In this document: positions 3,301 through 54,464 of the stretch, piece by piece
Numbering within the stretch: the stretch's first letter is position 1
Layout of the letters: each line of letters starts with the position of its first letter
Sequence record: MK250027.1
Strand: one strand, 5' to 3'
DNA length: 64,000 nucleotides
Made by a program: the position numbers and the translations under genes
Notes under the pieces: generated by a model
Seen by the model: the letters and a program-made list of their open reading frames with translations, nothing else
Database searches by the model: none
What the model was told of the DNA's origin: nothing

Positions 3301-6300
3301 TATTAACAGAATATGTATAATTAAGTTCTTTTGTTGATTTAAACTTAACAACATTATTGTAACGCCAACCTAATGTTTCAAAACAATAATTGGAGAATGC
3401 ACAATAATAATTATCAAAATAATCTGATTGATTTGTCAATGCATGCATTTCATAAGTTATATTACTATTAAAATATGAAATAGTATCATCTTTAATATTA
3501 ACAGGATCTTCTGATTCAACATAACAATGTAAATCACTTATATTATTTAAATAATTATGTTCAGAATTATTATCTATATTCTTTATCCAATCATTTTCAT
3601 TATCATCCGGTTGTATATCATTTTCAATATATTTAATACCATTATGTTTAATAAATGAAATACTGTTATTATATTCTTTATTTGTTGTATATAATGATGA
3701 TACAAGACCATTTACTTTATCAAATCCAAAATAATCATAATGAAAATCATCAAACTTTGGTGCTAATATATGTTGAACATACATATTATCATATGATGAA
3801 ATTATAGAAATACTCTTATCATTATAAGATCCAACTTTAATTATATTAGTATTAAATTTCTCAATACATTTTATAATACGATTAATCTGTACATCTAATG
3901 TTGCAGTTATATCATTATATTCCAAATCCTATGAATAAAATGAAATTCTATAGAAATAAGTATTTTCAGAATATCTACATTTCTATTTGGCAACATATGG
4001 ATTTATATTATAATCAGTCTCTAATAATCTATCATCATTTGATGCAATTATTTCATATACAATATGTTCAGTTGTAAACTTATTTGTTTCATATGTATTA
4101 CCAGCATTAGTAACAGAAGATTTAATAGGATAATCCTATGCAATAAATTTAATATGTTCACCACATTCAATAGGTTTATTGAAATGTAATATTATAAAAC
4201 TTTTATCAGTATCTTTATCTATCTTAATTTCTGATGAATCTAATGACATTAAATTTGAGTCTGGAGTATTAGTGACATAATTCTTAAAGAAATTCTTTAA
4301 ATCAATATCAGTCTAAACTCTACCTACATTATTATTTGTTATTGCGAAGAATAATCTATCATAATATTTCTTATCGAATATTACTTTATAAATATTCTCA
4401 TCTCCTTTATAAATATCACCATTTTCATCATATTTAGTTAATACTGTATTTCCTGTACTATTCTTAGAAGAAACAACATAACCATAATTAATGAAATCAT
4501 TTGCAGTTAAATATAATCCAAAATAACGATGCATAGAATATTCTTCCATATCATTATCATCAAACATAAACTCAAGGTTTATAATATTGGAATATATAAG
4601 ATTATGTCTTTCAAAGCCAGCAATAATATAATTATTAAACATTTCTTGTTTATTAGCTATATCTGAATTTAATATTTTAGATCCAAAATATGTTGTCTCT
4701 GACTAATTAACAAGAATGCCTCTATCTACTGATATACCTTTCCATATATTATTGCCTTGTCTATAATAAGGAGAATTCTAATTATAATCCTGTTCAATAA
4801 ATTGCAAATAACATTGTCCATAATTAGACAACATATTCTTATAATTATTAAGATATTGTCCAATAGATGTTGTTGTTCTTAAATCAAATGTCTTTATAAC
4901 CTTTGATTCTTTAATTAATTTCTTTAATTTTTCTGTATCATTAATTCCTTCACCTGAATATGTCTCTTCATTAAATATATCGTCATATCTGAATATCGCG
5001 AAGAATTCTGGTACATTATTTCCTATATGTAATGGCGCGAGAATCTTCATATTTTCAGAATAAAGACTATCTGTATTTGTTTCTGCACCATATTCATACA
5101 TTGTTTCATATTGATCTTTATAATCAGTATAAACCTTATGTGCTTTCAGAGAATTTTCTGGTAATCCAAATAAATTTTTAATAGGAATTTTACTGAATAC
5201 CTTTTTTATATCTCTTGGATAATTACCATCAGATGAAATAGGGTATTTACGAACATTCTTATTATTTAATACAGCATTAGCTTTAAATGTATCAAGATAT
5301 AAGTTATAATCTTTATCTACAACTAATTTAATATTTCCAGATAACTTTGGATTTGCTCTTAATAACATTGATGAATGATGTTGTGTATTAAGTTCATAAC
5401 CTTTATTATCATAATTTGTTAGATGCTTTTCATTTTCATCATTAGTAACTATTAATCGTCCGTTTATTTTATTGCTAGATTTATCAGTAATAGTTAAAAC
5501 AATATCTTCTGATGAGCTAATAGGATAATCATCATCTAAACTTATTGTAAATATACCAGGTTCTATCCTATTTTCAAATATAATATTATTATCTGTTTTA
5601 TTTATGAAATCATTAATATGAACACCATTAATTCTTAAATAATTTTTCAAAGCATTATTCTATAATGTTATAATATAATTTGAAGGAGTTTCTGTTTTTA
5701 CACGAATATTACTTCCATATACAGATATTTTATTTATAACAGACTATGTATTAATATCAGATATTTTTTTATCTTTTAAAACTATCATATCCGGTACTTG
5801 TTCTTTTAATTTATCCTAATCAATTATCAACTAATCTGTAATTTTGTCAACATATGAAATTTCTAAATTTGCTTCAATATCTGTTAAACTTTTATCGGAT
5901 ACTTCTTTTTCTGTATTTGTATAATCATATACATCTGTTAAATAAATATAATTTCCAGATAAAATAGGATATACACCATATCTAGGAATTTGTTTTGTTA
6001 AAGGATTCGCACATTCTTTTGTTTCAATACTATGTCCGTCTTCATCTATGTCTATTTCATAATTATATAATTTTTCATTATTGTTTATATCGTCATTACC
6101 AGTTGCTATTTCATACTTAGGTTTATCTTCATCCGTATTTATTAATACATAACGATGATATATAGCTCTATAAGAACTGTCTATACAACTTATACTCTTT
6201 TCACCTAATGTTATTAATTTTGTGTTATCAGCTATATTACCATTATTAGGATAATCGTTATTATCTTGGACAGGTACACTATAAATTATAGTATCTTTAT

Positions 6301-43016: not shown

Positions 43017-43088
43017 TGGGGATTAGTATAGTGGTCAGTACAGAGGTCTCTAAAACCTTTAGGCCGAGTTCGAGTCTCGGATCCCCAA
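43017..43088 (+). tRNA. Amber suppressor tRNA (anticodon CUA), Gln-type
   Basis: Acceptor TGGGGAT/ATCCCCA (U1-A72), D stem GTAT/GTAC, anticodon arm GAGGT-CTCTAAA-ACCTT, T arm CCGAG-TTCGAGT-CTCGG. Confidence 0.92.
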
Positions 43089-43130
43089 CAATTAAATGAC
43101 ATAAGTAATATTTTAAAGATTTGATGAATT

Positions 43131-44944: not shown

Positions 44945-45351
44945 GGGGATGAATTTGGATTTGCTTATTAATTATGTGGTAATAAATCGTGTAGGAAAGT
45001 TAATAGCCTTTTGTAGTAATACAAAGAAACTTAGCAAATAAATTTAAATGACGACGAAATAGAATTTCGTATGGCAGCTTAATCCTGATAGGATTGGTAA
45101 TATACACCCATTGAAGCATTTGCTCCTTATACGGTAAGTTTGAGCATTGCCACGGAGTTCGTAAGAGTGATAATCTCTGTTAAATAAAACTCTTACATAT
45201 ACTTATTCATTGTCCAATAAGAGTGATTATGACATTAAACTGTTTAACTCTAATAACACAGATATAAATGAAAACTAATAAAGACATACGCACGTAGATA
45301 GTTTATTATTGACATGTTAGTAATACGTGGTTTCGAGTACCACCATCTCCA
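44945..45351 (+). ncRNA. ssrA: tmRNA; tag reading frame ...DDEIEFRMAA* (about 45050-45082)
   Basis: 5' GGGGATG pairs with 3' CATCTCC-A including the G3-U70 Ala determinant; T arm GTGGT-TTCGAGT-ACCAC; internal tag ending AA-stop; exact resume codon uncertain. Confidence 0.88.
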
Positions 45352-45490
45352 CATTTTTAGATTATATTTCATAATATAGAATTTTTAATTGTTTAATTTT
45401 GTAAATGAGTTGTATGTTTAGATAAACATATGACTCATTTTTTTGTATAATAATAAATAAGATAATAAAACTAAATATAAGCATAAATAT

Positions 45491-47377
45491 ATGCCAACTA
45501 AATTTATAGCAAGAAAGTTTAATCCAGGGAAAGCAGATCATAATAAAATAAATACACTTATTAATCTGTCTTCACTTAGTTTAAATTCAGCATAGAGTAT
45601 TCTTAAAACTTCATTGGCTTTAGGATCTACTCAAACAAGTAATTATTCTGGTGATTCATTAACACCGTTTAATGATATTTTAAATCAAGATTAGAATAAG
45701 TTTACATAGTATGCAGATATTACTAAAAATACAAGTTAGTCTTATGCATACTATGATTTGTCATATCAATAGAGAAGAGAATAGTTAAGGTAGTTTGCTT
45801 CACAACAAACTATTTCATTTGTTTTAGATACTATTGCAGATGAATCTATTATATTGGATGAAAATAATTATTTTGCATAGTTAGATTTAAATCTTCTTAA
45901 ATTAAAACTTAATACTAATTATAAAGGTGCAAATGGAGAAACTGCTGATGATTTAATAAAGAATTGTCAGAAAGCATTTAAGATTATATATTCAACATAT
46001 GGATGGGATAAATCTAATGATGCATGGAATTATTTTAAGAAATTTCTTATAGAAGGTTATCTTGCATTTGAGATTGTTGTTGATAATCTTATGAAACCTA
46101 CAAGAATCATAGGTATGAGGGAATTGGATCCTGCTACATTGGAACCTGATATTGAAATTGATCCAATGACAAATAAAGAAGTAAAGGTTTGGTATCAATA
46201 TAAAGGTGACGCATAGTTAGAAAGGAAAATTCCAGATTCTAATATTGTATATATATCATGGTCAACAGGTATGTATGGAGAGTAGTCACGTGTATCATAT
46301 CTAGAAGGTTTAATAAGATCATATACAATGTTAACATAGTTGGAGACTTCTCGTATGGTATGGAATATCATGAATGCATAGAAAAGAGTTAAAGTAGGTA
46401 TTCCTGTAGGTAATATTTCTTAGGATAAAGCTCGTGCACGCGTAAATGAAGTTAAAGCAGATTGGAATGAAGAAACAACAGTTGATGAAATATCAGGTGA
46501 GATGGTAGTAAATGGACAACCACGATTCTCATTTTCAAAGACACATTTCTTCCCTGTACGTGATGGTAATTCAATGACTATAGAAGAAATCCCAACAGAA
46601 GGATATGATTTAAGTGATATTACTCCATTGAAATATTTCTGGAGGCGTTTTATATTAGAAACTAAAATACCAGCTAATAGATTTATGATTGATCCTGCAG
46701 CAGAAGGAGCGCATCCATTGGGTGGTGATGATGCAAGTATAACACGAGAGGAATATGCGTTTGGACGTTTTATTAGTCGTGTTAGAAATATATATCGTGA
46801 AATTTTGTTAAAACCATTATGGGTACAAATATGTTTAATGATGCCAGAGTTAGCAAGTTCTGAATTATTGAAACAATGTATAGGTATTGTTTTTAATGAA
46901 GAAAATATGTTTGTTAAAGCAAAAGAAAGAACTGCGTTAAAACAAGGCGCGGAAATTATAGGTACATTAGCATAGATTCAATTAGGTGAGAATAAACCAT
47001 TCTTTAGTATGAAATTCTTAATTGAGAAATTCTTAGGTATGTCTGATGAAGATTTTGCACTTAATGAGAAATATAAACAAGGTGAAATTATAGAGCGCTT
47101 AGAACAAGCTAAAACTATTAAACAACATCAAGAAATGGGTAAACAAGTTGGTGAACAACAAGGTAATGGAACTCCTGGTGAAATGGATTTCGGCGGAGGT
47201 TCTGATGCAGGTGGCGGAAGTTCATTTGACGATTCATTTGGAGGCGGTTCTGATGCAGGCGGTGATTTTTCTGGAGGTGATGAAGTATTCTCTGGTGGTG
47301 ACACTGGTATGGGATCCGGTGGTTCTGAAATTGCAGATACTGGTGGCGGTGATGAAGGTGGAGGTGACTTCGCTTAA
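45491..47377 (+). CDS. Portal vertex protein (T4 gp20-like), 628 aa; many TAG=Gln
   Basis: LDTIADESI, GIPVGNIS.DKA, FFPVRDG..TIEEIP, LKYFWRR...IPANRF, ITREEYAFGRFISRVR; Gly/Asp-rich tail. Confidence 0.88.
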
Positions 47378-51484: not shown

Positions 51485-51559
51485 GGTCCGTCTGGTGTAA
51501 TTGGTAACATGACAGATTGTGATTCTGTTGTTCAGGGTTCGAGTCCCTAACGTGACCCA
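51485..51559 (+). tRNA. tRNA-His(GTG), imperfect acceptor stem
   Basis: ACAGA-TTGTGAT-TCTGT anticodon arm, G-1/C73, TTCGAGT loop. Confidence 0.8.
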
Positions 51560-51576
51560 AAATATTATTAATATTT

Positions 51577-51652
51577 AGCGTAGTGGCCCAGTTGGTCTAA
51601 GGCACCTGTTTTGGGAACAGGTTAGATCGCACGTTCGAATCGTGTCTACGCT
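51577..51652 (+). tRNA. tRNA-Pro(TGG)
   Basis: AGCGTAG/CTACGCT; CCTGT-TTTGGGA-ACAGG. Confidence 0.9.
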
Positions 51653-51767
51653 ACAGAATAGAGTTCTTATGTTATCCTTACATAACTAAAAGAACTAAAA
51701 CTTAAGATGGTAAGGCATCTATATAATGGAAGTTCACGCCCAAGGGAAGATTTATAAGTTATAATTT

Positions 51768-51842
51768 ACTCTGTTAACTCAATTGGATTAGAGTATTTCG
51801 CTACGAACGAAAAGGTTGTGAGTTCGATTCTTACACAGAGTA
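51768..51842 (+). tRNA. tRNA-Arg(ACG)
   Basis: ACTCTGT/ACAGAGT; TTTCG-CTACGAA-CGAAA. Confidence 0.9.
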
Positions 51843-51851
51843 CAAGTAAAT

Positions 51852-51924
51852 ATCTCTATAGCTCAAAAGAATAGAGCAGTTCTCTCCTAAAGAACAGATA
51901 ACAGTTTGATTCTGTTTGGAGATA
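51852..51924 (+). tRNA. tRNA-Arg(CCT), T-loop TTTGATT
   Basis: ATCTCTA/TGGAGAT; GTTCT-CTCCTAA-AGAAC. Confidence 0.8.
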
Positions 51925-52441
51925 CAAACAAAATTAACATTATTAATATAGACTTTTATCTATTAATGGAATATATTATAATGTAATTTGAATTTTAAAA
52001 TACTATTAAAATGTGGGGAGTAGAGTTCCCATCATTTAAAGAGTTTCGAGAAGAAGGTATTGTATGTAAAAGCATTAAGTTTCGTTTAGCTGACGAAATG
52101 TTACCAAGCGGTGATGGTATTCATGTACATAGGTCCATCCGTATAACTTCAGGGAATCGTAAGCATTAATCTTGGAGAGTACAGTTTTTAGTCTGAAATG
52201 ACGAATTTTCCTACTGGTTGCTCAATATGATATTAAGAGTCGGAGATAATTATTTGTAAGTTCCACAATTACGAGAGGAAAATGGAATTAAGTTGAAGGA
52301 ATAACGTGATTATTCTTGGTGTGATTAGGAGAACGAAAATAACCAGTATGTATGGTGTACGTGTGCATACAGAAACAAAGCAAATAATAGCCCTTAGAGA
52401 ATTTGCCGAGTAAAGGACATTAATAGTATTTTTATTTATTT

Positions 52442-52519
52442 GCAGTATTGGTGTAGCTGGAGGCGCATTCCTGACTTCCACTCAGGCGGCTTGCGCGAGT
52501 TCGATTCTCGCATACTGCT
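52442..52519 (+). tRNA. tRNA-Gly(TCC)
   Basis: GCAGTAT/ATACTGC, U73; CCTGA-CTTCCAC-TCAGG. Confidence 0.9.
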
Positions 52520-52728
52520 CATAATAAGGTAGAGTATCAATGAATGATAGAGAATAAGTTCCTGTCTGAGATCAACCTATCTGTAGTATTTAGATAATTT
52601 TATGTATACATAAAATTATAACGAAGTTTATATTACCTGTAGTCGTAATATTCAAATCGTTCGTTGACATAGTTATTCCGTGATGTAGTAGAGAGTTATA
52701 ATCAGCATATAACAAACGGAATATTTTT

Positions 52729-52801
52729 GCGGAAGTATATCAATGGCTAGATAGATACGTTGCCAACGTATAGGTTGTGAGTTCGAGTCTCATTTTCCGC
52801 T
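52729..52801 (+). tRNA. tRNA-Gly(GCC)
   Basis: GCGGAAG/TTTCCGC, U73; ATACG-TTGCCAA-CGTAT. Confidence 0.9.
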
Positions 52802-52944
52802 CTATAAACGTTTCGAGGTTTTAAAGTTGAATGTACCACCTTGCGCTTGTGTTGCTATTCACCTTTGAGTAATAGTAAAAAACTTATGGTACCAAGGATG
52901 TTTTCTACGTTGTTACATCCATTTTTTTGAATATGATAGAATAT

Positions 52945-53089
52945 GAGAGTCAATACAGCAAATTAAATTGATAGATAATGTTTGAAGATTATACACAAAA
53001 AGACTCTTGAATCAAATTATAATGGGAGGCAATACAGCAAATTTTGTATTAAGGATTATTTTGCTAAAATAATATTCTATACGCCTCCT
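52945..53089 (+). ncRNA. Two tandem structured RNA elements sharing CAATACAGCAAATT
   Basis: Copy 1 closed by AGAGTC/GACTCT, copy 2 by GGAGGC/GCCTCC. Confidence 0.5.
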
Positions 53090-53096
53090 GATACTT

Positions 53097-53179
53097 GACG
53101 AGTTGCTGAGAATTGGTTAATCGCACGGTCTGCAAAACCGTTGGTCTTTGACATGTCGGTTCGAGTCCGACACTCGTCT
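53097..53179 (+). tRNA. tRNA-Cys(GCA) with a 13-nt variable arm
   Basis: GACGAGT/ACTCGTC, U73; ACGGT-CTGCAAA-ACCGT. Confidence 0.9.
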
Positions 53180-53212
53180 CTTTAGATTAATATTTTAAAA
53201 TACTATTATAAG

Positions 53213-53473
53213 ATGAAGAAATTATTTTCTTTTATATTTTATACAATAATGATTACATCATTATTTGGATGTGCAACAAAACAAGATACAATTAATTATC
53301 TTAATAATTATGTACATAAAAATATTTCTGAAAATTGTATAAACATTTTCAGTAATCAAAGATATAATGAATATATTGATACTGTTACTAATATTAAATA
53401 TTATGTTTATATAGATTATAATAGTAACATCAATATAACAGATAAAAGATTTCCGAGGTATACAGCTCGTTAA
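53213..53473 (+). CDS. Small putative lipoprotein
   Basis: MKK + hydrophobic stretch + LFGC lipobox. Confidence 0.65.
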   Translation: MKKLFSFIFYTIMITSLFGCATKQDTINYLNNYVHKNISENCINIFSNQRYNEYIDTVTNIKYYVYIDYNSNINITDKRFPRYTAR

Positions 53474-53771
53474 AAGAGGTTGACTTGTATATTCTACATT
53501 ACCTACTGTATAACAATATATGAGTGTACATGTGAAAAGATACACCATGTTCTATTAATATAAAAATGTACATATATATGGTAACAATTATATTAATATC
53601 AGATGCATGACATATATGAATATAATAACGAATTCGTGAAATGACTATTGTTTTTAGTTGCTTGGAAACGGCGAACTTAGTTTTATCAATAGAGGAAGTA
53701 TAATATTAAAACAGTTAAATGTAAATCTTTCTGAGACAATGGGGACAACTTGTAGTAAGAGAGTATTTTTA

Positions 53772-53886
53772 GCTAGTATAGTTTAGTGGCAAAACACCCA
53801 AATCCCAGGGATAAGAGATGGTTTGAGTTGTAGTGTACAATACAATATACAGAAGATTTTGGTGAGTTCGATTCTCACTGCTAGCT
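53772..53886 (+). ncRNA. tRNA-like RNA (Gly-like ends) with an extra ~44 nt in the central region
   Basis: GCTAGTA/TGCTAGC-U, D arm GTTT/AAAC, T arm GTGAG-TTCGATT-CTCAC; no canonical anticodon arm. Confidence 0.6.
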
Positions 53887-53892
53887 CAATAT

Positions 53893-54022
53893 GAAGTGCG
53901 TAGTTTAAATGGTAAAACATCCTTTGAGTAGGACTCTGACGAGAGATAGATAACAATGTTAGACTCTATTTAATTCCATTGTTTTATTAATGAGTATAGG
54001 TTCGAATCCTATGGTACTTCCA
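53893..54022 (+). ncRNA. tRNA-like RNA with ~60-nt central expansion
   Basis: GAAGTGC/GTACTTC, D arm GTTT/AAAC, T arm ATAGG-TTCGAAT-CCTAT; irregular anticodon arm. Confidence 0.6.
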
Positions 54023-54310
54023 AATTTATATAGATAAAAAGATTCTGGTGATTAGATAAAACATTATAAGAAAAGAGAAAAAACTTAGGTAACTGCAGAT
54101 AACTAAGGGTCGTAAGAGTATATGAAGAAAGATGAACTATGGATACCTCCTTATAATGCGTTTTATCAATAATTAAAGTAGTCTATAATATAAGTTCATT
54201 AACGTTATAGAAAAAACGAATATTGATAAGTCTACTATGCAGATGGGGCATTGAGAATGCCGTATAGTTCTAAAGCATCGTAAAACAGTTTATTTATATA
54301 TTTTTAATAT

Positions 54311-54385
54311 GGCTAGATAGCTCAGTTCGGTTAGAGCGCGTGATTCATATCCACGAGGTCGTGTGTTCGATCCACACTCTTGCTA
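54311..54385 (+). tRNA. tRNA with CAT anticodon (Met or Ile2)
   Basis: GGCTAGA/TCTTGCT; CGTGA-TTCATAT-CCACG; GTGTG-TTCGATC-CACAC. Confidence 0.85.
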
Positions 54386-54464
54386 CAGTGTTTTTAGTTG
54401 TTTATTAATGATTTGAGATATATCAATTTTTGGTATATCTCTTTTTTATTTAGAAAATAATTTG

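What the first reader, a model, noticed from the sequence alone, without database searches (positions are those of the whole stretch)
53772..54022. Two tandem tRNA-like RNAs with intact acceptor, D and T arms but large central expansions
Both keep the tRNA elbow (TAGTTTA..TGG.AAAACA D arm, TTCGA T loop) and a paired acceptor, but the segment between the D and T arms is about 66 and 77 nt instead of about 22, with no canonical 7-nt anticodon loop. They are too short for group I introns and lack a tmRNA tag. They may be tRNA mimics (decoys for anticodon nucleases or T-box/RelA-type sensors, or synthetase sponges) or a new processed-intron tRNA class.
Basis: partly seen in the sequence, partly recalled or inferred. 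Interest (0 to 1): 0.75.

Follow-up and report, generated by a model that had tools for sequence, protein, structure and literature searches.

The report
Two non-decoding tRNA-shaped RNAs, Lak megaphage
A giant gut phage (Lak) carries two neighbouring, conserved and transcribed genes for RNAs that keep the upper half of a tRNA but have structured hairpins where the anticodon should be, so they are probably tRNA mimics, not decoders, spliced tRNAs or dead genes.

Summary
The window is Prevotella phage Lak-B7/B8. At 53772-53886 and 53893-54020 lie two tRNA-family matches (36.0 and 29.9 bits) with 66 and 77 nt between the D and T arms.

- **Conservation:** both occur in every Lak lineage I could fetch. 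The acceptor and T stems show many compensatory changes, and the inserted hairpins covary too.
- **No anticodon arm:** it is replaced by a 3-4 bp hairpin with a 6-8 nt loop. In element 2 that loop changes between lineages.
- **No intron:** removing one segment never restores a canonical arm. Metatranscriptome contigs from four studies cover both elements unspliced, in a unit that runs from a conserved leader to tRNA-Met and a terminator.
- **Acceptor ends:** element 1 looks Gly-like (U73, G1-C72). Element 2 looks His-like (G-1:C73, invariant).
- **K-turn:** the invariant blocks of element 1 fit a K-turn pattern.

I read them as a paralogous pair of non-decoding tRNA mimics. Their target is unknown.

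The Lak paper's supplement already lists them as tRNAscan calls ('Gly CCC'; 'Undet'/'Pseudo') without analysis.

In passing I found a conserved, highly expressed structured RNA of about 450 nt at about 51988-52436. Its contigs look circular.

The parts
53447..53515 (+). Conserved upstream block: a covarying hairpin plus a promoter-like TTGACT ... TGTATAAC. RNA contigs of the A lineage begin 10-20 nt downstream of its equivalent.
   Evidence: Alignment (also conserved in crAss-like phage cr130_1). Contig starts at L009:4053-4066 in three of the four runs (4020 in the fourth).
53525..53771 (+). 5' leader RNA of the unit. Its 3' part (about 53591-53771) is almost invariant among Lak lineages and about 85% identical to a stretch upstream of tRNA-Gln in phage cr130_1.
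   Evidence: Covered by RNA contigs.
53772..53886 (+). tRNA-like RNA 1 (115 nt). Listed as 'Gly CCC' in the Lak paper's Table S2B. 7-bp acceptor, D arm, T arm, discriminator U73.
   Evidence: Rfam 36.0 bits. Covariation. Table S2B read.
53797..53810 (+). Element 1 hairpin in the anticodon-arm position: CCC / AAATCCCA / GGG. 3 bp with an 8-nt loop, or 4 'pairs' with A.A and a 6-nt loop. Invariant, except one C>A in locus L019.
53813..53860 (+). Element 1 extra arm. Invariant strands AAGAGAT (53813-19) and AGAAGATTTT (53851-60) flank a variable inner hairpin (53820-50; 31 nt here, 20 nt in the A lineage, 10 nt in L021). The two strands fit a K-turn pattern: U-A closing pair, GAA loop, tandem G.A/A.G, then 4 A-U/G.U pairs.
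   Evidence: Compensatory changes in the inner hairpin (GTTGTA/TACAAT, GTTACG/CGTAAT, GTTACA/TGTAAT). The K-turn assignment is my inference from the pattern.
53893..54020 (+). tRNA-like RNA 2 (G-1 plus 127 nt). Listed as 'Undet ???' in B genomes and 'Pseudo TTG' in A/C genomes in the Lak paper. G-1:C73 is present in all variants.
   Evidence: Rfam 29.9 bits. Covariation. Table S2B read.
53920..53933 (+). Element 2 hairpin 1 in the anticodon-arm position: TCCT / TTGAGT / AGGA. The outer pair covaries (U-A, C-G, A-U). The loop differs between lineages (GAG, GAA, GAT; 8 nt in L021).
53934..53945 (+). Element 2 hairpin 2 (CTCT GACG AGAG). Every stem position changes between lineages while pairing is kept.
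   Evidence: CTCT/AGAG, TCAC/GTGA, TGTGT/ACACA, CTG/CAG. Independent folds.
53953..53982 (+). Element 2 hairpin 3: a 6-bp stem ACAATG/CATTGT with a 16-18 nt loop that keeps TTAG...TTAAT. Flanked by the conserved linkers ATAGATA and ...TTAATGA.
   Evidence: ACAATG/CATTGT, CTATG/CATAG, ATAATG/CATTAT. The competing CATT/AATG pairing is broken in 2 of 8 sequences.
54021..54310 (+). Conserved non-coding spacer between element 2 and tRNA-Met, with a covarying hairpin near 54240-54265. Part of the same RNA contigs.
54311..54386 (+). tRNA-Met(CAT), the last gene of the unit.
54415..54441 (+). Intrinsic-terminator-like hairpin (12 pairs) followed by a T run. Conserved in the A, B and C lineages aligned.

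Best explanation
The two elements are a paralogous pair of functional, non-decoding tRNA-shaped RNAs specific to Lak megaphages.

Shown:
- They are transcribed unspliced within one unit: promoter-like block, conserved leader, element 1, element 2, spacer, tRNA-Met, terminator.
- Each keeps a covarying 7-bp acceptor stem, a D arm with GG and a T arm with TTCGA, so the tRNA elbow and the acceptor/T minihelix are intact.
- Each lacks a 5-bp anticodon stem with a 7-nt loop. That position holds a 3-4 bp hairpin.
- The variable region holds one (element 1) or two (element 2) further hairpins that covary.

Inferred:
- The tRNA top half lets the host tRNA machinery (RNase P, 3' trimming, CCA addition) cut them out of the precursor and stabilise them.
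- The acceptor ends carry synthetase identity marks. Element 1 has U73 with G1-C72, as the phage's own tRNA-Gly genes do. Element 2 has G-1:C73, the histidine mark, which suffices for HisRS even on minihelices. They are therefore probably recognised, and perhaps charged, by GlyRS and HisRS.
- With a stem 1-2 bp too short and a loop of the wrong size, they cannot pair with a codon on the ribosome.
- I therefore read them as tRNA mimics. They engage a tRNA-binding partner through the acceptor end and elbow. The invariant inserted parts give the specific function. In element 1 these parts form a K-turn-like kink at the base of the extra arm.

The partner is not known.
For: - **Identity of the window:** 100% identical to Lak-B7 and Lak-B8.
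- **tRNA core:** Rfam scores. 100% and 94% of cells paired, with 7 and 6 doubly compensated pairs.
- **Conservation:** both elements are present in the A, B and C lineages and in five further metagenomic lineages, with no 'ordinary' tRNA version anywhere.
- **Element 1 invariant blocks:** alignment positions 20-48 and 80-89 are invariant, apart from one substitution in one sequence, while the neighbouring stems have changed.
- **Inserted hairpins:** they covary and are recovered by independent folding of each lineage.
- **Element 2 loop:** the loop at the anticodon position varies (GAG, GAA, GAT), so it is not a fixed anticodon.
- **No intron solution:**
- **Expression:** RNA contigs from four studies cover the leader and both elements contiguously (L009:4055-4860, 4066-4645, 4020-4555, 4193-4715) with no junction. 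The downstream ORF has zero depth in three of the runs, so DNA carry-over does not explain it.
- **Terminator:** after tRNA-Met.
- **Paralogy:** the shared D arm is unique to the pair in each genome.
- **Identity rules:** bacterial Gly uses U73, G1-C72, C2-G71, G3-C70, C35 and C36. His uses G-1 and C73, and HisRS charges G-1:C73 minihelices (PMC9976931). G-1:C73 is present in all nine distinct variants of element 2. The phage's tRNA-Gly genes also end G1-C72 ... U73.
Against: - No data on mature ends, CCA addition or charging. Contigs cannot show processing, and rare spliced forms would be dropped from them.
- Only about five independent lineages, all Lak, so the covariation rests on few events.
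- Element 1 lacks G3-C70, and most lineages lack C2-G71, so glycylation is uncertain.
- The invariant UCCCA in the element 1 loop could still reflect a decoding or synthetase-binding role.
- The K-turn is a pattern match only. An alternative register (GAGAU/AUUUU) uses the same invariant bases.
- No L7Ae-family protein is encoded by Lak-B7 or Lak-A1.
- No binding partner has been identified. The neighbouring genes give no clue.
Confidence: 0.6

Rival explanations
1. The tRNA part is only a processing and stability scaffold, as in tRNA-linked small RNAs. The active parts are the inserted arms. These would act as a protein-binding platform (for example the K-turn of element 1) or as a base-pairing regulator, with no role for synthetases or other tRNA-binding factors.
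For: - The strongest sequence constraint lies in the inserted parts, not in the tRNA stems.
- The invariant strands of element 1 fit a K-turn pattern.
- The unit also holds other conserved non-coding RNAs, namely the leader and the spacer.
Against: - The G-1:C73 and U73 marks are conserved although a mere scaffold would not need them.
- No L7Ae-family protein in the phage genomes.
- The apical loops of the extra arm of element 1 are not conserved.
- No target was identified.
Confidence: 0.2
2. At least element 1 is a genuine decoding tRNA: a class II-like tRNA-Gly reading GGG or GGA, with an idiosyncratic anticodon arm and a very long variable arm, as tRNAscan-SE called it.
For: - The Lak paper's tRNAscan-SE call is 'Gly CCC', score 39.7 in A1.
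- UCCCA is invariant in the loop.
- U73 with G1-C72, and a T arm close to that of tRNA-Gly(GCC).
- Other Lak tRNAs have long variable arms with normal anticodon arms.
Against: - Only 3 Watson-Crick pairs and an 8-nt loop, with CCC one base from the 3' strand. No register gives more than 3 of 5 stem pairs with a 7-nt loop.
- One lineage has CCA in place of CCC.
- The phage already has tRNA-Gly(UCC) and tRNA-Gly(GCC).
- For element 2 the loop triplet changes between lineages.
Confidence: 0.1
3. They are intron-containing tRNA genes, a further kind of the 'enigmatic introns' of Lak phages or a bulge-helix-bulge type. Their transcripts would be spliced into ordinary tRNAs.
For: - Lak phages do have tRNAs with insertions after position 37: Tyr, Phe, Thr and Gly-UCC.
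- Both elements are far oversized.
Against: - The published introns carry their own acceptor-like stem and T arm. These elements have no second T arm.
- Exhaustive single-excision tests give no canonical arm shared by the lineages.
- No junction in RNA contigs of four studies.
- The inserted hairpins covary and their flanks are invariant, which is unlike a spacer to be discarded.
- No group I intron match.
Confidence: 0.05
4. They are decaying tRNA pseudogenes, kept only as RNase P/Z punctuation of the precursor or not functional at all.
For: - Low tRNA scores. The label 'Pseudo' or 'Undet' in the Lak paper.
- One metagenomic variant of element 2 (L029) has two acceptor mismatches.
Against: - Invariant central blocks at a local background of about 77% identity.
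- Compensatory changes in five helices outside the tRNA core.
- Present in all lineages.
- Expressed.
Confidence: 0.05

Closest known systems
Class II tRNAs (long variable arm: Ser, Leu, bacterial Tyr, Sec), including the long-armed tRNAs of Lak itself (Trp-CCA 91 nt, 'Undet' 96 nt)
   Same: Acceptor, D and T arms, with an extra helix that emerges between the anticodon-arm position and the T arm.
   Different: - Those keep a 5-bp anticodon stem and a 7-nt loop. Here the arm is 3-4 bp with a 6-8 nt loop.
- Here the extra region is 35-60 nt, with a K-turn-like base (element 1) or two hairpins (element 2).
The 'enigmatic intron' tRNAs of Lak phages (Devoto et al. 2019, PMC6784885, Table S6)
   Same: Same phages. 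Oversized tRNA genes. Conserved insertions of unknown purpose.
   Different: - Those insertions sit after position 37 of an otherwise normal tRNA.
- Each carries a hairpin plus its own acceptor-like stem and T arm.
- Excising them restores a canonical tRNA.
- None of this holds here. These two elements are not in Table S6; they appear only as calls in Table S2B.
Phage T4 stable RNAs RNAC and RNAD (species 1 and 2)
   Same: - A tandem pair of 119 and 139 nt, 6 nt apart, inside the tRNA gene cluster, with unknown function.
- RNAC ends in a T arm (GGTTCGAATCC) and an acceptor-like stem.
   Different: - No sequence similarity.
- Neither T4 RNA reaches the Rfam tRNA threshold.
- RNAD has no T arm, and RNAC carries a 5' extension.
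- This is a resemblance in kind, not membership.
Irregular allo-tRNA-like sequences with extra stems and G-1 (reviewed in PMC7609411)
   Same: Polycistronic tRNA-like genes with possible five-stem junctions and a G-1 base. Some are not usable for translation.
   Different: Those have 8/4 or 9/3 acceptor/T geometry and come from soil bacteria. Here the geometry is 7/5 (plus G-1 in element 2), in a gut phage. No homology was tested.
K-turn motifs (for example Kt-7 of 23S rRNA, box C/D RNAs, T-box and SAM-I leaders). What these motifs are rests on my own knowledge.
   Same: Element 1 has a canonical helix, a 3-nt bulge GAA, tandem G.A/A.G and a non-canonical helix. GAAGA on the bulged strand is as I recall it in Kt-7 (for the sequence).
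   Different: - To my knowledge a K-turn has not been described in the variable arm of a tRNA-like RNA.
- There is no structural or protein-binding evidence here.
- No L7Ae homologue in the phage.
Bacterial Y-RNA-like YrlA and tmRNA (other tRNA mimics)
   Same: Both use a tRNA-like elbow and T arm for a function other than decoding.
   Different: - No Rfam match of either family to these elements at E <= 10.
- In YrlA the ends form the Ro-binding stem, not the acceptor (my own knowledge).
- tmRNA has a tag reading frame and pseudoknots. The phage has a separate tmRNA at 44945-45354.

Membership tests
tRNA (Rfam RF00005) | Score at or above the family's gathering threshold (29 bits) | tested here: met
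   36.0 and 29.9 bits. Orthologues score 31-41 bits.
tRNA (Rfam RF00005) | 7-bp acceptor stem, D arm with G18 G19, and 5-bp T stem with a TTCRA loop, all kept by compensatory change | tested here: met
tRNA (decoding) | 5-bp anticodon stem with a 7-nt loop (U33, purine 37) | tested here: not met
   3 bp with an 8-nt loop in element 1. 4 bp with a 6-nt loop in element 2, supported by covariation of the outer pair. The best 7-nt register has at most 3-4 of 5 pairs.
tRNA (decoding) | Anticodon conserved among orthologues | tested here: not met
   The element 2 loop reads GAG, GAA or GAT, or is 8 nt long. The element 1 loop is invariant except CCC>CCA in L019.
Intron-containing tRNA (Lak type, bulge-helix-bulge type or group I) | Removal of one segment restores a canonical cloverleaf, at the same place in all orthologues | tested here: not met
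   ARAGORN run on all single deletions, plus explicit enumeration of 17-nt arms.
Intron-containing tRNA | A spliced junction present in RNA | tested here: inconclusive
   No junction inside either element in contigs of four metatranscriptome studies. Contigs drop rare forms, and structured small RNAs are poorly sampled.
Group I intron / tmRNA / YrlA | Match to the family covariance model | tested here: not met
   No match at E <= 10 in 53650-54150.
Class II tRNA | An extra helix between the anticodon arm and the T arm | tested here: met
Class II tRNA | A canonical anticodon arm next to the long variable arm | tested here: not met
   Contrast the Lak Trp and 'Undet' tRNAs.
tRNA-His identity set (bacterial) | G-1 paired with C73 | tested here: met
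   All nine distinct variants of element 2. Rule taken from PMC9976931.
tRNA-His identity set (bacterial) | Anticodon GUG; histidylation | not testable with these tools
   No GUG in a loop. Charging needs an experiment.
tRNA-Gly identity set (bacterial) | U73, G1-C72, C2-G71, G3-C70, C35, C36 | tested here: inconclusive
   U73 and G1-C72 are in all sequences. C2-G71 is in B7 only. Pair 3-70 is U-A. CC is present in the loop but not in a canonical register.
K-turn | Canonical helix, 3-nt bulge, tandem trans G.A/A.G, non-canonical helix | tested here: met
   Sequence pattern only: U48-A80, G81 A82 A83, G84.A47, A85.G46, then U-A, U.G, U-A, U-A. Invariant in all lineages. The canonical helix is 4-6 bp in the A lineage and L021, and 2 bp followed by an internal loop in the B lineage.
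K-turn | Kinked three-dimensional fold, or binding of an L7Ae-family protein | not testable with these tools
   No PF01248 gene in Lak-B7 or Lak-A1. Folding was not tested.
T4 RNAC/RNAD | Sequence or structure homology | tested here: not met
   The T4 RNAs give no tRNA-family hit above threshold and no similarity. Only the gene arrangement is alike.

The most novel reading that the evidence does not exclude
Lak megaphages make a dedicated pair of chargeable but non-decoding tRNA mimics. One is Gly-type and carries a K-turn in its extra arm; the other is His-type with a three-hairpin body. They would capture or redirect a host tRNA-binding factor during infection: a synthetase, EF-Tu, a tRNA-targeting defence enzyme or an aminoacyl-tRNA-dependent transferase. 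This would be a new class of phage tRNA-mimic effector RNA.
Probability: 0.25. Interest if true: 0.8.

Novelty: new variant of a known kind. Interest (0 to 1): 0.55.

Why it matters
Phage tRNAs are now seen as tools against host tRNA-targeting defences and for code switching. Lak phages recode TAG and carry the largest phage tRNA sets in the gut.

A conserved, expressed pair of tRNA-shaped RNAs that cannot decode, yet keeps synthetase identity marks, would be a natural example of tRNA mimicry used by a phage. It would also give a possible parallel to the T4 RNAC/RNAD RNAs, whose roles were still given as unknown in reviews of 2010 and 2022. It offers concrete, small targets (115-130 nt) for charging, structure and pull-down experiments.

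The analysis also shows that the tRNA array of Lak is a cluster of several uncharacterised structured RNAs. This explains in part the 'highly expressed intergenic regions' noted by the discoverers.

Tried and rejected
- **ARAGORN:** default settings find neither element. With introns allowed and a lowered threshold it gives Gly(ccc) with a 22-nt intron and Lys(ttt) with a 55-nt intron. Both models have mismatched anticodon stems and are not conserved, so I rejected them.
- **Single-sequence folding:** z-scores are only about -1, so single sequences are uninformative. Comparative data were needed.
- **Searches for more lineages:**
  - IMG/VR held only three Lak contigs.
  - The metagenome pattern scan returned mostly A-lineage copies.
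  - The genome-collection scan gave one Mesorhizobium hit, about the number expected by chance for 20 specified bases in 596 Gb.
- **The window's own assembly:** not held. The nearest record, G001, is a fragment.
- **RNA runs for the B lineage:** none found. A-lineage runs were used instead.
- **RNAalifold on MAFFT alignments:** it missed hairpins 2 and 3 because of misalignment, and proposed a CATT/AATG helix that is broken in 2 of 8 sequences.
- **RNAduplex between the elements and neighbouring RNAs:** it gave only long, meaningless duplexes.
- **Neighbouring proteins:** a 163-aa ORF, a WYL_2 protein, GrpE, a PRPP-synthetase-like protein and the portal give no functional link.
- **L7Ae-family search:** negative.
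- **tRNA-Sec or allo-tRNA reading of element 2 (8/5 geometry):** considered and dropped. The D arm is 4 bp with an 8-nt loop, no UCA is present, and pair 7-66 is a G.G mismatch in most lineages.
Full report
**What the window is.** A 4-kb stretch around the finding is 100% identical to Prevotella phages Lak-B7 and Lak-B8. It is 99.3-99.7% identical to the other baboon Lak-B genomes and about 80% identical to the human Lak-A1, A2 and C1. These are the 540-550 kb megaphages that read TAG as glutamine. The window carries:
- an amber-suppressor tRNA (43017-43089) and a tmRNA (44945-45354);
- a portal gene that is open only with TAG = Q;
- a tRNA array at 51485-54386, all on the + strand.

**The observation.**
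- Rfam's tRNA model matches 53772-53886 at 36.0 bits and 53894-54020 at 29.9 bits. In both cases a large insertion sits between the D and T arms.
- By direct count the stretch between the D stem and the T stem is 66 nt in element 1 and 77 nt in element 2.
- ARAGORN misses both with default settings. With introns allowed and a relaxed threshold it returns models with mismatched anticodon stems.
- Single-sequence folding energies are unremarkable, so the case rests on comparison.

**Comparative evidence.** I collected orthologues from several sources:
- Lak-A1, A2 and C1;
- three IMG/VR contigs;
- contigs found through homologues of the downstream 163-aa ORF;
- a metagenome pattern scan.

This gave 11 distinct sequences of element 1 and 9 of element 2, in about five lineages: B7; L015 and L017; L016; the A group; and L021. 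Every lineage has both elements in tandem, 7-10 nt apart. None has an ordinary tRNA in their place.

The tRNA core is kept by compensation.
- In element 1, three acceptor pairs and four T-stem pairs changed on both sides, and all cells are paired.
- In element 2, two acceptor pairs, one pair of hairpin 1 and three T-stem pairs changed on both sides, and 94% of cells are paired.
- For both, no shuffle in 500 reaches the observed covariation score. Sliding the partners by 1-3 columns drops pairing to 37-54%.

The two elements share a D arm that occurs nowhere else in the genome, so they are paralogues.

**The central parts are structured, not junk.**

Element 1 reads, in order:
1. D arm, then one A.
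2. CCC / AAAUCCCA / GGG.
3. AU.
4. AAGAGAU.
5. An inner hairpin.
6. AGAAGAUUUU, then one purine.
7. T arm.

Everything except the inner hairpin is invariant in all lineages, apart from one C>A in L019. Meanwhile the acceptor and T stems a few bases away have been rewritten. The inner hairpin is 31 nt in the B lineage, 20 nt in the A lineage and 10 nt in L021. Within the B lineage its 6-bp stem shows three compensated pairs (GTTGTA/TACAAT, GTTACG/CGTAAT, GTTACA/TGTAAT).

Element 2 reads, in order:
1. D arm, then one A.
2. Hairpin 1 (NCCU / 6-8 nt loop / AGGN). The outer pair is U-A, C-G or A-U.
3. Hairpin 2. All four stem positions differ between lineages and pairing is kept.
4. The linker AUAGAUA.
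5. Hairpin 3. Its stem is ACAAUG/CAUUGU, CUAUG/CAUAG or AUAAUG/CAUUAU. Its 16-18 nt loop keeps UUAG...UUAAU.
6. A linker ending UAAUGA.
7. T arm.

Constrained folding of each lineage on its own recovers the same architecture.

**Not a decoding arm, not an intron.**
- The hairpin at the anticodon position has 3 Watson-Crick pairs with an 8-nt loop in element 1, and 4 pairs with a 6-nt loop in element 2.
- In element 2 the 6-nt register is the one supported by covariation. The loop triplet differs between lineages (GAG, GAA, GAU), which excludes a fixed anticodon.
- I deleted every possible single segment and ran ARAGORN on the products. I also enumerated every way of assembling a 17-nt arm from a 5' part and a 3' part next to a 2-6 nt variable loop. 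No solution with 5 pairs, or with a shared anticodon, exists across lineages. The commonest ARAGORN calls simply reuse hairpin 1 as a defective anticodon arm.
- The introns published for Lak tRNAs are different objects. They lie after position 37 of normal tRNAs, and each contains its own hairpin, acceptor-like stem and T arm.

**Expression.** No RNA run holds the B-lineage sequence. The A-lineage copy is held by metatranscriptomes of pig and other animal guts. I laid contigs from four runs of four studies on L009.
- Contigs span 4055-4860, 4066-4645, 4020-4555, and 4053-4172 plus 4193-4715. That is the leader, element 1 (4292-4395), element 2 (4405-4526) and the spacer, in one piece and with no junction.
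- The ORF just downstream has zero depth in three of the four runs, so DNA carry-over is not the explanation.
- The contigs of three of the four runs start 10-20 nt downstream of a conserved TTGACT ... TGTATAAC block; the fourth starts inside that block, at 4020.
- A strong, conserved terminator-like hairpin follows tRNA-Met.
- The unit is therefore: promoter-like block, leader, element 1, element 2, spacer, tRNA-Met, terminator.
- Contigs cannot show mature ends, CCA or charging.

**Acceptor ends.**
- Element 1 always has G1-C72 and discriminator U73, as do the phage's tRNA-Gly(UCC) and tRNA-Gly(GCC). Its T arm in B7 is almost that of tRNA-Gly(GCC).
- Element 2 always has a G before position 1 that pairs with C73. 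By the compiled identity rules this is the bacterial histidine mark, and it is enough for HisRS to charge mini- and microhelices (PMC9976931).
- It is an inference, not a result, that the RNAs are recognised or charged by GlyRS and HisRS. Element 1 lacks G3-C70, and most lineages lack C2-G71.

**A K-turn-like motif.** ARAGORN's drawing of element 1 without the inner hairpin pairs AAGAGAU with AGAUUUU through a tandem G.A/A.G. Shifting by one base gives the exact K-turn pattern:
- the inner hairpin closed by U48-A80 as the canonical helix;
- a 3-nt bulge G81 A82 A83;
- G84.A47 and A85.G46;
- then U-A, U.G, U-A, U-A as the non-canonical helix (for the strings).

From memory, GAAGA on the bulged strand is also the string of Kt-7. 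This would explain why both strands are invariant while the hairpin above them is free to vary.

It remains a pattern match.
- RNAfold prefers a GAGAU/AUUUU register that uses the same bases.
- No L7Ae-family gene is present in Lak-B7 or Lak-A1.
- Element 2 has GA dinucleotides in both linkers, but with a 7-nt spacer rather than 3 nt. I do not call it a K-turn.

**What is already known.** Table S2B of Devoto et al. 2019 lists exactly these loci from tRNAscan-SE:
- 'Gly CCC' (A1 111254-111357, score 39.7; B1 423028-423142, score 26.2);
- 'Pseudo TTG' or 'Undet ???' (A1 111368-111487; B1 423150-423276, score 20.8).

They are not among the introns of Table S6. The only comment is a general remark that pseudo-tRNAs 'may confuse the translational apparatus'. 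Later Lak papers add nothing on them. The objects were therefore recorded but not analysed.

The nearest things in kind:
- Class II tRNAs.
- The T4 tRNA-cluster RNAs RNAD and RNAC. They are a tandem pair of 119 and 139 nt of unknown function. RNAC has a T arm and an acceptor-like end but no tRNA-family score.
- Irregular allo-tRNA-like genes.

**Verdict.** The function is unknown. My best reading is a pair of tRNA mimics matured by the tRNA machinery that engage a tRNA-binding factor. The main rival is a tRNA-scaffolded RNA whose active parts are the inserted arms.

**Seen in passing.**
- The 517-nt gap between tRNA-Arg(CCU) and tRNA-Gly(UCC) holds a structured RNA of about 450 nt (about 51988-52436).
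  - It is 80-99.8% identical among 13 distinct copies.
  - It has about 130 predicted pairs, at least 11 of them doubly compensated. A long helix joins its two ends.
  - It has no Rfam match.
  - In RNA libraries it is 10-100 times deeper than its neighbours.
  - Contigs of three studies run from its end back to its start. This points to a circular RNA, or to a tandem copy.
- The leader of the unit is shared at about 85% identity with the crAss-like phage cr130_1. There it precedes tRNA-Gln.

Noticed in passing
window about 51988-52436 (+); equivalent to L009:2826-3279: A conserved structured RNA of about 450 nt lies between tRNA-Arg(cct) and tRNA-Gly(tcc). Thirteen distinct copies are 80-99.8% identical. 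It has about 130 predicted pairs, at least 11 doubly compensated, and its ends are joined by a long helix. No Rfam match. RNA depth is up to 3227, against 10-260 for its neighbours. Contigs in three studies join its 3' end back to its 5' end (3279>2826 or 3277>2838), as for a circular RNA or a tandem repeat.
   Followed up: partly
window 53447-53515 and 53591-53771: The promoter-like block and the leader RNA upstream of element 1 are almost invariant among Lak lineages. They are about 85% identical to a stretch of crAss-like phage cr130_1 (NC_055901 about 67503-67720) that precedes its tRNA-Gln. A hairpin near 53630-53641 covaries. This is probably an independent small RNA, or a regulatory leader, exchanged between unrelated Bacteroidales phages.
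   Followed up: partly
window 54021-54310: The spacer between element 2 and tRNA-Met has several conserved blocks and a covarying hairpin (about 54240-54265: GGGGCATT..AATGCC here, GATGGTTT..AAACCATT in the A lineage). It is covered by the same RNA contigs. It may be a further non-coding RNA.
   Followed up: no
window 53213-53473: An 86-aa ORF is present between tRNA-Cys and the leader in B7, L015 and L017. It is absent from L016, the A lineage and L021, so it is an insertion or deletion inside the tRNA array.
   Followed up: no
window 51485-51558: The tRNA-His(gtg) of the array has a poorly paired acceptor stem in the ARAGORN drawing and only a local Rfam match (model positions 8-63, 36.4 bits). 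Element 2, by contrast, carries a clean G-1:C73 acceptor end.
   Followed up: no
window 53097-53180 and 52442-52520; Lak-B7 125290-125380 and 201603-201698: Several Lak tRNAs that are normally class I have long variable arms alongside normal anticodon arms: Cys 84 nt, Gly-UCC 79 nt, Trp 91 nt and an undetermined one of 96 nt.
   Followed up: partly
L009:3320-3417 (A-lineage tRNA-Gly(TCC) with its published intron): One RNA contig (run X22) skips 96 nt here, but with 9 different letters between the two sides. This fits an intron-less allele of another strain, not a spliced product.
   Followed up: partly
window 43017-43089, 44945-45354, 45491-47377: An amber-suppressor tRNA (cta), a phage tmRNA just at its gathering score (47.3 against 47 bits), and a T4-like portal gene with 14 in-frame TAG codons. 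All are consistent with the known TAG = Gln code of Lak.
   Followed up: no
L035 (Mesorhizobium sp. WSM4083 chromosome): The only hit of the 20-base core pattern of element 1 in 596 Gb of bacterial and archaeal genomes. About one match is expected by chance, so I treat it as chance.
   Followed up: no
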